Shown piece by piece: positions 53,005 through 61,703 of a stretch of DNA of 64,000 nucleotides. Origin of the DNA: Magallana gigas. Its lineage: Eukaryota. Under the pieces are notes generated by a model that was not told the origin of the DNA, made no database searches, and worked only from the letters and a program-made list of their open reading frames with translations. The stretch is from contig NC_088853.1 in the NCBI RefSeq assembly GCF_963853765.1, forward strand, positions 682,001-746,000. Reading direction: 5' to 3'. Both the position numbers and the translations under genes were made by a program. The stretch's first letter is position 1; every line of letters begins with the position of its first letter.

Positions 53005-56000
53005 ATGCATTCTTTTATTAACAGTATCCAGCTCCGATTTGTTCTGCTTCTTTACGTCATGTCAGTGTCAGCATCAGGATTTATCCTAGATTACAGGGGT
53101 GAGTTATGTTTACATGGATAATTCAGGCTTACAAGGGTGAGTTATGATTACAGGGGTGAGTTATGTTTACATGGATAATTCAGGCTTACAAGGGTGAGTT
53201 ATGATTACAGGGGTGAGTTATGATTACAGGGGTTAGTTATGATTACAAGGATAATTTAGGATTACAAGGGTGAGTTATGATTATAGGGGTTAGTTATGAT
53301 TACAAGGATAATTTAGGATTTCTGTATTTTAACACCTGGTCTTATAGCGTGACGCCCGCTCTGTTTTTTTTAATATTTTCATATCAAAAAATCTACGAAA
53401 AAAAAATTATAAACCCGTTTTAATGATGAAACATTTTAAAACTCCTTTTTCGTAGAAATAGATTTCCTGGATTGTCACGCAGCAATAATTCGCCGTAAAC
53501 ATATTAACAGGAAACCTAAACATTTAATCCAACAACATGCTATTTTTGACTTTCAAATTTTTCAATACTGTTAACCAAAAAAATATACGTTTTGAAAATT
53601 TTTCGCAAGGTAAAAGTTTTAAAATCCCGAGGAGGATTCGAACTCCTGACTTACAGGTTCGTAGTGAACTCTCCTCTTCACTGAGCAACACTGTTATATG
53701 ACAATTTTCGGAAGGAAACTATTTATACAATTACACTTGATTTTATTGTTAAGGTGGAATAACACATTATCACAAAATGGCAAACCGCTGATCGAAACAA
53801 CATTTCGTTTTATAAAAAGGATTTTATGGACTAAAACGTGTAACATACTCTATAGCCGAGTGGATAAATTGTTGGACTTGTGATCCGTACATACCGAGTT
53901 CGAAAACCGCAGGGGCTTTTGTTGTTACTTATTACTGGAATTATTATTTTAGATATTCATTTTTTTTATCCCCAAACTGCAGATTGTTCGCTTATTTGAC
54001 ATATGTACAGTTTATATATCATTATATATTTCATTATCAAAATGATTCCTGTTAATTTGGGTGACATTTTCAAGGTGTGTTATTCCACCTTAACGCCGAT
54101 AAATAGTCACGGCATATACTAGTAGGTGTCTATTACCGTCCTAGGTACTGACATAATCCTGGAGTCAATGCATGCAAATCCCCTCGGTTCTGTTTGATGC
54201 AACGCTAGAATAAGATAGTACCCAATACCAAAGACAGTACTAAGATAGTACCCAATACCAGAGAGAGTACCCAAGATCAAAGAAAGTACCCAATACCAAA
54301 GATAGTACCCAATATTAAAATATCAAAATAGTACCCAATATTAAAGATAGTACCCACTATTAAAGATAACGATAGAATTGAAACGAAAGAAAATGTTTTT
54401 GACAAAATATTCGTAAAAATTAAGGAGATCCATGTAAATTTAATCCTAATATGTGAAGAGAAAATTTGCACTTTCTGTAAGAAGCACCATTGATAGCGCA
54501 TTTTGTAATATTATATTTTAAATAGCGCATCAGTATTTCTATTAAGGTCAGACGACATGTTCCTCGAGAATCCTTTTTGTATCTCCTCGTAATGAAGAGT
54601 TCCAATAAAAAATATTAATTTTATAATTACTTATAAAATGATTAAATTTAGTTGGATTTGGTTATATGTCTAGATGGCCGAGTGGTTAGAACCGTGGCCG
54701 CTCTCTGCTAGAAGCGTATAGGTTCTAGAGGTCGTGAGTTCAAAGCCCCGCCCCGGCCGAGATATAGCTATAATTTTGTGAGTTTCGCTATGCTGTAGGT
54801 GCATTTATTTTTATATCAGCAATTCAAGTGTATTTTCAAGAAGATTATATAGGAAATTGCATACTCTAGTATTTTGCAGAAATGCCTGGTAAGGTACCCT
54901 AATTTTTTTTGCAAGAAAGCTCGTCAAGGTAGTAATAAACCATTAACAAATTCCTGGAAAAAGTTATCTAAAATTGAGGAATGTGTCGTCTGACCTTAAA
55001 TTTGCATTCTTTGACTTGTTTTGACCACTCAGCGCTATCTAATCATTAATTAAATGAAATTTTGGATTGCTGTTAAAAATCAGCAGATGACCTTTGACCT
55101 TTATGACGGTAAATGCGTCATCCGAGAAACAATTTACTTGTCATATATCCGAAACGTAATTTATTCAAAATATTCTTCAACGGCGGATTGTTCAATTGGG
55201 AATTTACTAATCGATAGAATTGAAATAAATATCAGATGTGATTATATATTACTGTAAATGTCCACCGTTTCGTTTAACAGTTGGTAAAATATCATATTCC
55301 AGTGAATGGATAAAAACCAATTTTGAAATTATAATTATTTTTCTCAACTCGGTATATCGTCAAGTGTAGTGAATTATAAAAATCAGAACCAATTACAAAC
55401 GGTGTGTGATCGCCTGTATCTGCCTCATAGTACCTTTAGTATTCTTAGATATTCATGTAGTTTATTCGGGGACCTGTTACATGTATCTATCATGAGTTTT
55501 CAGCGTGGACTGTCTGTCATCCTAATCTAGCTTGCTTCCGATGATGTTATCTTTATCATTTATCTGTCGTTCCATTCATCATCTGTTCTCCGCCTTTCTT
55601 TCTATTCTTAAGCATTTAATTCTTCACATTTGTCTCTATTCTATATCATTTATCCGCCATTGATATTATTAATTATCTGTGTTCCATCCTTCTCTCTATC
55701 CAACATCATCGGTCCGCCATTCTCTCTATCCTATATCATTTCTCCGCCATTCTCTCTATTAATTATCAGTGTTCCATCCTTCTTTCTATCCTTCACCATT
55801 AACCCGTCTTTCTCTCTATTCTACATAATCAATTCGCCTTTCTCTCTATCCTATATCACCTATCCGCCCTCCTTCCCCTGTGACGATATTCTCGTGTTTG
55901 CTCCTGTCGACCCAAGGTGAGAAATAATGAAGCGTTTAAGTTCATAATCAATGGTTTATTCTAATCTAAATGGCGATCTATTCCGGTAATAACCTGCCTC

Positions 56001-60420: not shown

Positions 60421-61703
60421 TCCCCTAATATTCCCTGTATGCTACCCCACATCAAGAGTTTTAATCTTAGAAATGAAATGGCTCCAAGGTTGGTTGAGCA
60501 ATCGATTGCGCATGTTCAGATCCGGGTAAGCTGTGTATCTTGAACAAACAGACCGAGCCGAGAAAATCCCAGTCTGACTGTACTCGTCAATGAAATCACT
60601 GTAAGCGATAGATTTATTGTCAGCCAAATCAATCTAATCGATAGATTTAGTCTGTTTAGGAGCTCGATGTTACGAATTTGGTCCGATTATTTAATTTAAA
60701 CCAACATCAGCCTCAGTATTTGAATGTCATAAATTGCTGAACACAAAAATAACGTTTGTTGTAGTCCTGGCACTAGAGGAGCGCCGACATTTAGACACAT
60801 AAAAAAGAGTGTCGCTTGACAGAGATTGTATAATGCAGGTCAATGCCCGATGTTTGAGTTCTTTTGATATTTTTTTTCAGATTTGGTCAACAACGATCCT
60901 GATTCAAGTCCACAATCCAAATCCGCTTTCCTACAGAGATTCATACGGCGCTTGCGCAGTGATGACCTTGACACCGACCTCAACCTTCGAACTTTAGTAC
61001 CACGTGACTATAGCTCAGGTAAAAAATATTTAATAAGGACGTCATAATAATGCATAACGTTACATACAGACACGGAGCATTGTATTTGAAAGGGGAGGGG
61101 ACAGGCTCATCCCCCAAAAAAAACTTGACACGCAAAAAAAAAAAGGAAAATGTTACTTTCCCAAATCCTGAAAATCTTAATCGGGGGGCAATTATTATTT
61201 TTAATTCAATTTCACTGCTTATTTCCTTGATTTTAATTCATACAAATGGGGGGGGGGGGGGGGGACTCTTTGATAATTAAATTTTTTATGTTATTTAAGA
61301 AAAGTCTTTGCCCCCCCCCCCCCCCCCCCCCCCCGATGCTATGTGCATGAAATATTCAAGAACAGCGGTATCACATAAGGGTTTGTACAAAATTACCATC
61401 TGGGGAATGTTTTATTGGAATGAAATATTACGCTTGAAATTATTGTTCTCATTTCTATAGGTGTAAAATAATGCAATGGACTGATCCTTTAGCTTTATAG
61501 AACGTGTTTTGGCCGAAAATCGACGTCTTTTCTATATGTTTATCATTTAGACACTGTTTCTCTTGTCTCATGCTTTTCTGTTTTGTTTTTTAATTTTAGG
61601 CCGATTTGAAGGAACTTCCGTGAAAAGGGATTATGGGATCAATCCGCCATTCCACGAACTATGCCGTATGATGAACATGCCCTATTGCTCTTACCGAAGC
61701 TAA
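53005..61703 (+). CDS. Putative neuropeptide/peptide-hormone precursor, 111 aa, three coding exons
   Basis: Exons 53005-53098 (MHSFINSIQLRFVLLLYVMSVSASGFILDYR, donor gtgagt), 60881-61018 (acceptor tttttttcag, donor gtaaaa) and 61600-61703 (acceptor ttttttaattttag, TAA); both introns phase 1; continuous open frame; ends VKR-DYGINPPFHELCRMMNMPYCSYRS; AATAAA near 61924. Confidence 0.7.
53090..53325 (+). repeat. Minisatellite copying the donor of the signal-peptide exon
   Basis: Units attacaggg|gtgagttatg, interleaved with ttacatggataattcaggc. Confidence 0.85.
53753..54089. mobile_element. Same TTAA MITE, copy 2, inserted into a decayed relative of the 17154-18349 family
   Basis: ttaa|ggtggaataacac...gtgttattccacc|ttaa; the preceding 53625-53745 resembles 18000-18125. 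Confidence 0.8.
54670..54760 (+). mobile_element. tRNA-derived SINE-like head
   Basis: A-box-like tggccgagtggtt and B-box-like gagttcaaagcc; no clean cloverleaf. Confidence 0.45.
56274..56406. other. Assembly gap (N run); second gap at 62164-62363
   Basis: N characters in the sequence. Confidence 1.
57611..57660. mobile_element. Probable terminus of a non-autonomous Helitron/Helentron-type element
   Basis: actagattttgacccgtgcttgcacgggtt with a perfect cccgtgc/gcacggg hairpin; family assignment is from recall only. Confidence 0.35.
59498..60145. repeat. 31-bp minisatellite, about 21 copies
   Basis: Unit gtcttgaatattttgtgttatagtcattcat. Confidence 0.95.

What the first reader, a model, noticed from the sequence alone, without database searches (positions are those of the whole stretch)
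53005..61703. Hidden three-exon gene encoding an unrecognised neuropeptide-like precursor
The gene is absent from the ORF track because every exon is short. Three exons with strong splice sites and matching phase-1 junctions give a 111-aa protein: a hydrophobic signal peptide, an acidic/polar propeptide with RR and single-R sites, a KR convertase site, and then a 24-aa C-terminal peptide DYGINPPFHELCRMMNMPYCSYRS with one Cys pair (C-x7-C). This layout is the established one for single-copy peptide-hormone precursors such as somatostatin/allatostatin-C, MCH and elevenin, but those rings differ (AstC C-x6-C; MCH and elevenin C-x8-C) and I recognise no sequence match. That exon 1 joins exons 2-3 across a 7.8-kb intron containing an N gap is inference.
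Basis: partly seen in the sequence, partly recalled or inferred. Interest (0 to 1): 0.82.

Follow-up and report, generated by a model that had tools for sequence, protein, structure and literature searches.

The report
Oyster-only orphan peptide-hormone-like precursor gene
The three short exons form a real, spliced and expressed Pacific-oyster gene for a 111-residue secreted precursor, and its last 24 residues (a one-disulfide loop after a Lys-Arg cut site) are almost unchanged in all four oyster lineages compared, which points to an undescribed oyster-family signalling peptide, though the tissue that makes it is still unknown.

Summary
Exons 53005-53098, 60881-61018 and 61600-61703 give the 111-aa protein as described. 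RNA contigs from several runs join 53098 to 60881 and 61018 to 61600. The N gap at 56274-56407 lies inside intron 1 and is spliced out, so it does not affect the reading frame.

The genome is Magallana (Crassostrea) gigas. The gene is not hidden: RefSeq lists it as 'uncharacterized protein LOC105346367'. It is single-copy.

Orthologues with the same three-exon, phase-1/phase-1 structure exist in C. virginica, Saccostrea echinata and Ostrea edulis. Across them, KR plus the 24-mer is nearly invariant: dN is 0.02-0.06 with synonymous sites saturated. The rest of the precursor has dN 0.46-0.68.

No relative was found outside oysters, and there is no Pfam match. The tested features of somatostatin/urotensin-like, allatostatin-C and MCH-type peptides are not met. 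The gene is absent from the oyster neuropeptide surveys I could read.

Best reading: an orphan, Ostreidae-restricted prohormone. Neural or endocrine expression, peptide processing and a receptor are all untested.

The parts
52793..52804 (+). Conserved TATA box (TATAAATTCC core), about 210 nt upstream of the ATG; likely core promoter, which would put the start of transcription near 52825 (inferred)
   Evidence: The motif and about 110 nt downstream of it align across C. gigas, C. virginica, O. edulis and S. echinata.
52543..53004 (+). Transcribed sequence upstream of the ATG (5' UTR; true 5' end uncertain)
   Evidence: Transcript contig L005 is collinear with 52543-53098. L006 starts at the equivalent of 52857. 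A stop at 52984-52986 closes the frame upstream of the ATG.
53005..53098 (+). Coding part of exon 1: Met1 to the first base of codon 32. It holds a signal-peptide-like N-terminus (hydrophobic core FVLLLYVMSV, with a likely cut near SAS|G).
   Evidence: The donor is G|GTGAGT. The junction to 60881 is seen in X1, X2, L005 and L006.
53089..53304 (+). 19-bp minisatellite (GATTACAGGGGTGAGTTAT, about 11 copies) that starts in the last 10 bases of exon 1 and repeats the splice donor
   Evidence: Tandem Repeats Finder. Transcripts use only the first copy.
53099..60880 (+). Intron 1, phase 1, about 7.8 kb; contains the assembly gap at 56274-56407
   Evidence: Orthologous introns are 7.4 kb (C. virginica), 6.7 kb (S. 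echinata) and 25.5 kb (O. edulis).
60881..61018 (+). Exon 2: acidic propeptide with the conserved block AFLQxFIRxLRS (predicted helix, R-x-L-R site) and LVPRDY
   Evidence: Mean word depth is about 39 in X1 and X2.
61019..61599 (+). Intron 2, phase 1, 581 bp, GT..AG
   Evidence: The joint 'skips 581' appears in X1, X2 and X11.
61600..61628 (+). Start of exon 3: end of the propeptide and the invariant Lys86-Arg87 site (61623-61628)
61629..61700 (+). Predicted mature 24-residue peptide with Cys99 and Cys107 (C-x7-C); 21 of 24 positions invariant across the five aligned oyster sequences
   Evidence: Computed [M+H]+ with the disulfide is 2922.23.
61701..61703 (+). Stop codon TAA
61704..62163 (+). 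3' UTR, which continues beyond the assembly gap that starts at 62164. It contains ACGTCA..TGACGTCA (61703-61719) and GCTGTGATA (61739-61747), both conserved among oysters.

Best explanation
This is a single-copy, three-exon gene of the Pacific oyster (RefSeq LOC105346367, unnamed). It encodes a 111-residue prohormone-type precursor. Proposed mechanism (inferred): the N-terminal hydrophobic segment sends the protein into the secretory pathway and is removed near Ser24|Gly25. A prohormone convertase then cuts after the invariant Lys86-Arg87, and possibly after the conserved R-x-L-R57. This releases the C-terminal 24-mer DYGINPPFHELCRMMNMPYCSYRS, closed by a Cys99-Cys107 disulfide into a 9-residue ring. 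That peptide is secreted and acts as an intercellular signal (neuropeptide or peptide hormone) on a conserved receptor, most likely a GPCR. Shown here: gene structure, splicing, expression, orthology across Ostreidae, and very strong purifying selection focused on KR plus the 24-mer. Inferred: signal-peptide cleavage, convertase processing, the disulfide, signalling function, and cell type.
For: Splicing and expression: (14 RNA-like runs from at least 8 studies hold about one third of the words of the stretch, which fits the exons alone; spliced contigs appear in X1, X2, X11, L005, L006). Annotation and identity. The same three-exon, phase-1/phase-1 structure is present in three other oyster genera. 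KR plus 21 of 24 peptide residues are invariant, while the signal and propeptide are only about 35-55% identical. For KR+24mer, dN is 0.02-0.06 with 9-16 synonymous differences on about 15 synonymous sites. The rest of the precursor has dN 0.46-0.68. A hydrophobic N-terminus with small residues at -3/-1 occurs in all orthologues. No globular fold is predicted (mean pLDDT 52.6, pTM 0.21); only a signal helix, a helix at 45-58 and a short helix at 93-101 appear. The nearest named look-alikes by language-model features are mostly peptide-hormone precursors: NPS, DH31, PDH, UTS2B, gastrin, NPFF, NPF and NMU. All score below 0.9, so this is a lead only.
Against: There are no data on which tissue or cell makes it. 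The gene and its peptide are absent from the C. gigas neuropeptide-precursor table and the ganglion mass-spectrometry peptide list of Realis-Doyelle 2021, and from the supplements of Stewart 2014 as held. That could mean it is not a ganglion product. There is no C-terminal amidation signal. No SignalP run was possible. No receptor is known. The structure prediction rests on only 5 sequences.
Confidence: 0.6

Rival explanations
1. It is a secreted effector rather than a neuro/endocrine signal. Examples would be a host-defence (antimicrobial) peptide, a waterborne pheromone or gamete-related peptide, or a mantle or shell secretory product, made from the same kind of precursor.
For: The signal-propeptide-KR-Cys-peptide layout is shared by many defence peptides and pheromones. 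The gene is absent from ganglion-based neuropeptide catalogues. It is held at fair depth (about 39) by many RNA runs of unknown tissue. The family is taxon-restricted.
Against: The 24-mer is almost frozen across four oyster lineages (dN 0.02-0.06). By general knowledge, immune effectors usually diversify quickly. The peptide is near neutral (pI 6.7) rather than cationic. The gene is single-copy, unlike the typically expanded defence-peptide families.
Confidence: 0.2
2. It is a strongly diverged member of a known bilaterian Cys-loop family with a C-terminal peptide (MCH-type, allatostatin-C/somatostatin-type or elevenin), and the oyster peptide acts on the matching receptor family.
For: The general layout is the same: a short precursor with one C-terminal disulfide-loop peptide after a dibasic site. 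Short peptides diverge beyond recognition. UTS2B precursors appear among the weak feature look-alikes.
Against: The ring has 7 residues between the cysteines, whereas protostome SSRP-like rings have 4 (C.WK.C) and there is no WK here. Intron phases are 1+1, against 0+1 for SSRP-like genes and a phase-0 intron for spiralian AstC. MCH-type marks are not met: Met/Ile directly after Cys1, Lys/Arg penultimate to Cys2, ring of 8 or 10. The oyster already has a separate UII/SSRP-like gene, LOC105343318, with peptide GGVALCLWKVCPAGPWLVQ. There is no Pfam hit at E up to 10.
Confidence: 0.1
3. It is a small secreted protein of about 87 residues that acts whole. The KR is not cleaved, and the conserved C-terminus is a binding motif of the intact protein.
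For: Processing was not observed. A second conserved block, AFLQxFIRxLRS (predicted helix 45-58), shows that constraint is not limited to the last 24 residues.
Against: KR is invariant while the residues just before it vary freely. No fold is predicted (pTM 0.21). The divergence profile is that of a prohormone.
Confidence: 0.1

Closest known systems
MCH-type precursors (vertebrate pro-MCH; starfish ArMCHP, sea urchin Spnp14; Semmens et al. 2016, PMC4772807)
   Same: Short precursor (88 aa in starfish) with a signal peptide and one 19-28-residue peptide at the extreme C-terminus after a dibasic site. The peptide has one Cys pair and no amidation.
   Different: The ring is 7 residues, not 8 (vertebrates) or 10 (ambulacrarians). 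Arg rather than Met/Ile follows Cys1. Pro-Tyr rather than Lys/Arg-x precedes Cys2. No sequence or Pfam match was found. To my knowledge MCH-type signalling is known only from deuterostomes.
Protostome somatostatin/urotensin-II-related (SSRP-like) precursors, including Aplysia apUII and oyster Cragi-urotensin (LOC105343318)
   Same: Three-exon gene with a long first intron. The signal peptide is on exon 1 and the disulfide loop is on the last exon.
   Different: SSRP-like peptides have a C-x-W-K-x-C ring of six and introns of phase 0 then 1. In this gene the ring is C-x7-C without WK, both introns are phase 1, and the whole mature peptide lies on exon 3.
Allatostatin-C
   Same: C-terminal, non-amidated disulfide-loop peptide after a dibasic site.
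   Different: [quoted passage not shown] Here the ring is C-x7-C and the introns are phase 1.
Mollusc- or bivalve-restricted orphan precursors catalogued in C. gigas (e.g. Cragi-GRWRN, Cragi-GNamide, Cragi-CCCGS; Realis-Doyelle et al. 2021, PMC8398477)
   Same: These are taxon-restricted secreted precursors recognised only by layout and by conservation among close relatives.
   Different: This gene is not in that catalogue or in its mass-spectrometry list. No ganglion expression has been shown for it.

Membership tests
Prohormone / neuropeptide precursor (a kind, not a homology family) | N-terminal signal peptide | tested here: inconclusive
   A hydrophobic 10-mer (mean Kyte-Doolittle 1.8-2.7) and small residues at -3/-1 around positions 21-25 occur in all four orthologues. 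A helix is predicted at 2-23. No SignalP run was available.
Prohormone / neuropeptide precursor (a kind, not a homology family) | Conserved convertase (dibasic) site flanking the putative peptide | tested here: met
   K86-R87 is invariant in all 5 sequences, while the 4 residues before it vary.
Prohormone / neuropeptide precursor (a kind, not a homology family) | Purifying selection concentrated on the mature peptide | tested here: met
   dN is 0.02-0.06 for KR+24mer against 0.46-0.68 for the rest, with synonymous sites saturated in both.
Prohormone / neuropeptide precursor (a kind, not a homology family) | Expression in neurons or endocrine cells, and detection of the processed peptide | not testable with these tools
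   The peptide is not in the ganglion MS list of PMC8398477 as held.
SSRP-like (somatostatin/urotensin II-related) | C-terminal C.WK.C ring of six residues | tested here: not met
   The ring here is C-R-M-M-N-M-P-Y-C, without W-K. The family motif comes from PMC9048919 and from Cragi/apUII sequences.
SSRP-like (somatostatin/urotensin II-related) | [quoted passage not shown] | tested here: not met
   Both introns are phase 1 in four species, and the peptide lies wholly on exon 3.
Allatostatin-C | [quoted passage not shown] | tested here: not met
   The ring is C-x7-C and the introns are phase 1. The intron rule is; the ring size is from general knowledge.
MCH-type | Peptide at the C-terminus after a dibasic site, with a conserved Cys pair | tested here: met
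MCH-type | Met/Ile directly after Cys1; Lys/Arg penultimate to Cys2; 8 or 10 residues between the cysteines | tested here: not met
   Arg follows Cys1, Pro is penultimate to Cys2, and 7 residues lie between the cysteines. The criteria are from PMC4772807. No Pfam Pro-MCH hit was found.
Elevenin | Cys-loop peptide placed directly after the signal peptide (from memory, not checked in a paper here) | tested here: not met
   There is no cysteine between the signal peptide and residue 99. The loop is at the extreme C-terminus.

The most novel reading that the evidence does not exclude
The 24-mer is the ligand of a previously undescribed peptide-hormone system that arose within, or diverged beyond recognition in, the oyster lineage (Ostreidae). 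It would be a new C-x7-C peptide family with its own receptor, missed by all oyster neuropeptidome surveys. A less likely but more striking version is that it is the first protostome MCH-type peptide.
Probability: 0.45. Interest if true: 0.55.

Novelty: new variant of a known kind. Interest (0 to 1): 0.42.

Why it matters
Oysters are major aquaculture animals, and peptides govern their reproduction, settlement and feeding. The published C. gigas peptide repertoire is used as a reference for bivalves. A single-copy peptide that is almost unchanged across the four oyster lineages compared, yet absent from those catalogues, is a ready candidate. It can be synthesised, looked for by mass (calculated [M+H]+ 2922.23 with the disulfide) and screened against orphan oyster GPCRs. 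It also illustrates how taxon-restricted peptide signals stay labelled 'uncharacterized protein' in annotation. It does not change any general principle, because orphan lineage-specific precursors are common.

Tried and rejected
1. Known-family membership was rejected. Pfam gave no hit at E up to 10 and PDB sequences gave nothing. SSRP-like, AstC and MCH-type features were not met.

2. Identity with 'Cragi-urotensin' was considered, because that peptide was reported as 27- and 19-residue Cys-pair forms. It was rejected: that gene is LOC105343318 with a CLWKVC ring.

3. Relatives outside oysters were sought and not found. An exhaustive phmmer of the 33 C-terminal residues against 1.84 billion cluster representatives found only the gene's own cluster plus three repeat-derived artefacts. 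Profile and region searches of 5.8 billion proteins found only oyster sequences and genomic fragments. A 33-residue query cannot see relatives below about 60% identity, so this does not prove absence.

4. Literature searches found nothing. Peptide strings, LOC ids, accessions and SRR ids gave no paper. The supplements of four bivalve neuropeptide papers gave no occurrence.

5. No paralogue exists in the genome.

6. The structure model is too poor (pLDDT 52.6) for a fold search, so none was run.

7. Raw reads of run X21 gave no coverage of the exons at the 1% sampling used, so strand and level of expression were not obtained.

8. Earlier scan notes had nothing at this place.

9. The 470 nt of transcript contig L005 that lie beyond 62163 were not read or used, because they would fall in the assembly gap.
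Full report
**Observation**

Exon 1 is 53005-53098 with donor G|GTGAGT. Exon 2 is 60881-61018, with acceptor ttttttttcag| and donor G|GTAAAA. Exon 3 is 61600-61703, with acceptor ttaattttag|. It ends in KR followed by a 24-mer with two cysteines seven residues apart.

**The gap**

The N run at 56274-56407 lies inside intron 1. It cannot affect the reading frame if exon 1 is really spliced to exon 2, and that join was observed. 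In one search, 14 RNA-like runs from at least 8 studies hold 0.31-0.35 of the sampled words of 60881-62160. That share is what the exons without the intron would give.

In one search, Logan contigs of X1, X2 and X11 skip 581 bases between 61018 and 61600 (GT..AG).

A single 1736-nt transcript contig (L005, SRR24489179) maps 52543-53098, then 60880-61019, then 61598-62163. A contig from another Crassostrea species (L006, 81-91% identical) is spliced identically. Order and orientation across the gap are therefore right, and only the intron length is uncertain.

A second gap (62164-62363) falls in the 3' UTR. L005 runs 470 nt further without matching the window. I did not read those letters.

**Organism and annotation**

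The window is C1:682001-746000 of a 564-Mb, 29-contig assembly. The protein is letter-for-letter XP_034319741.2 of Magallana (Crassostrea) gigas. Allelic forms are XP_011453215.1 and XP_034319741.1, 'uncharacterized protein LOC105346367'. C. angulata has LOC128171427. UniProt holds two imperfect models, K1Q246 and A0A8W8NT13. The gene is therefore invisible only to an ORF track. It is annotated but unnamed, and it is single-copy.

**Orthologues and gene structure**

Full-length relatives exist in three other oysters:
- C. virginica, LOC111117768, 109 aa.
- Saccostrea echinata, LOC133198904, 113 aa.
- Ostrea edulis, LOC125660950, 105 aa.

In all three the gene has the same three exons with both junctions in phase 1 at the homologous codons. 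The first intron is long in each: 7.4, 6.7 and 25.5 kb.

A TATA box (TATAAATTCC, window 52795-52804) and about 110 nt after it are conserved upstream of the ATG in all four species. I take this to be the core promoter. The exact 5' end is unsettled, because L005 extends further upstream, to 52543.

**Selection**

In the alignment, K86-R87 and 21 of the 24 following residues are invariant. The consensus is DYGINPPFHELCRM[ML]N[MI][PA]YC[SA]YRS. The signal and propeptide are about 35-55% identical.

Nei-Gojobori counts show that this constraint acts on the protein and is not simple DNA conservation. In KR+24mer there are 9-16 synonymous differences on about 15 synonymous sites, which is saturated, but only 0-3.5 non-synonymous differences on about 63 sites (dN 0.02-0.06). 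The rest of the precursor has dN 0.46-0.68. This rules out a chance ORF.

A second, weaker conserved block is AFLQxFIRxLRS (residues 47-58, predicted helix). That could be a second convertase site or a sorting helix (inference).

**Other properties**

- All orthologues start with a hydrophobic stretch followed by small residues at -3/-1 near positions 21-25, just before an invariant Gly25.
- AlphaFold predicts no globular fold (pLDDT 52.6, pTM 0.21). It shows only the signal helix, helix 45-58 and a short helix at 93-101. With five sequences this is weak evidence, but it fits a prohormone better than a folded small protein.
- The nearest named look-alikes by ESM features are mostly peptide-hormone precursors, all below the 0.9 level at which the tool says a hit is more than a lead.

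**Comparison with known families**

Pfam has no match at E up to 10, and PDB sequences have none.
- SSRP-like (somatostatin/urotensin II-related) peptides of molluscs and annelids have a C.WK.C ring and introns of phase 0 then 1. [quoted passage not shown] Here the ring is C-x7-C without WK and both introns are phase 1.
- The oyster's own UII/SSRP-like gene is a different locus: LOC105343318, with peptide GGVALCLWKVCPAGPWLVQ (PMC8398477 supplement; Aplysia apUII).
- MCH-type peptides share the C-terminal position, the dibasic site and the Cys pair. Their other marks are absent: Met/Ile directly after Cys1, Lys/Arg penultimate to Cys2, and a ring of 8 or 10 (PMC4772807).
- Elevenin peptides sit directly after the signal peptide (from memory), unlike this one.

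I therefore do not file it under any named family. It works like these precursors without being a demonstrable member.

**Range and literature**

An exhaustive phmmer of the last 33 residues against 1.84 billion representatives returned only the gene's own cluster, an intron-retaining variant and three repeat artefacts. Profile and region searches of 5.8 billion proteins returned only oyster sequences. Short queries lose relatives below roughly 60% identity, so the claim is 'no detectable relative outside Ostreidae'.

No paper in the library holds the peptide strings, locus ids or accessions. The gene is not in the precursor table or the ganglion MS peptide list of Realis-Doyelle 2021. It is also not in the held supplements of Stewart 2014, the scallop survey or the 2025 Saccostrea study.

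**Verdict**

The gene is real, expressed and conserved. It has the full anatomy and the selection profile of a prohormone whose product is a 24-residue disulfide-loop peptide.

My confidence that it is a protein-coding secreted-peptide gene is above 0.95. My confidence that the peptide is an intercellular signal (neuropeptide or hormone) is about 0.6. The rivals are a defence or pheromone peptide (0.2), a diverged member of a known family (0.1) and an uncleaved small protein (0.1).

What is missing is the cell type, the processed peptide and the receptor. It is a new peptide family of a familiar kind, of moderate interest to invertebrate neuroendocrinology.

Noticed in passing
window 53089-53304: The last 10 bases of exon 1 plus the first 9 of intron 1 are amplified into a 19-bp minisatellite of about 11 copies, so the GGTGAGT donor is repeated many times. 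Transcripts use only the first copy. Logan ORF fragments P0013-P0015 read through it with differing sequences, which suggests the array is polymorphic. C. virginica, Ostrea and Saccostrea have an ordinary donor context without the repeat.
   Followed up: partly
window 61703-61719 and 61739-61747: Directly after the stop codon lies ACGTCA, then 3-4 nt, then TGACGTCA. TGACGTCA is a perfect CRE palindrome, and the pair could also form a 6-bp hairpin in the RNA. The arrangement is conserved in C. gigas, C. virginica and S. echinata with a variable spacer, and is degenerate in O. edulis. A GCTGTGATA motif about 35 nt downstream is conserved in all four (with a one-base insertion in S. echinata).
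   Followed up: partly
window 52580-52755 joined to about 53030: UniProt model A0A8W8NT13 (160 aa, P0019) uses an upstream exon ending at ...ACACAG|GT (about 52755), spliced to an internal acceptor within exon 1. This removes Met1 and buries the signal sequence. It is probably an annotation artefact or a non-productive isoform. Contig L005 is unspliced across that interval.
   Followed up: partly
window 35750-36391 (+): An ORF with a strong Frizzled cysteine-rich (Fz) domain match (PF01392, E 4.7e-34). It is an exon of a Frizzled/sFRP-type gene about 17 kb upstream.
   Followed up: no
window 36698-42964 (-): Sets of ORFs of identical length recur at an offset of 2888 bp (for example 37272-37922 and 40160-40810; 38420-38977 and 41308-41865). 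This indicates a tandem repeat of about 2.9 kb. The three ORFs tested had no Pfam match.
   Followed up: no
window 59489-60143 and 60351-60417: Intron 1 holds a 31-bp minisatellite of 21 copies (95% matches) and a (TC)33 run just upstream of exon 2. Intron 2 holds long G and C homopolymers at about 61248-61265 and 61311-61335.
   Followed up: no
exon 1, window about 53079: Run X1 and the RefSeq/C. angulata forms carry TCT instead of TTT (Phe26Ser), just after the predicted signal cleavage site. Other allelic differences are Ser7Cys and Ser76Asn. None lies in the 24-mer.
   Followed up: partly
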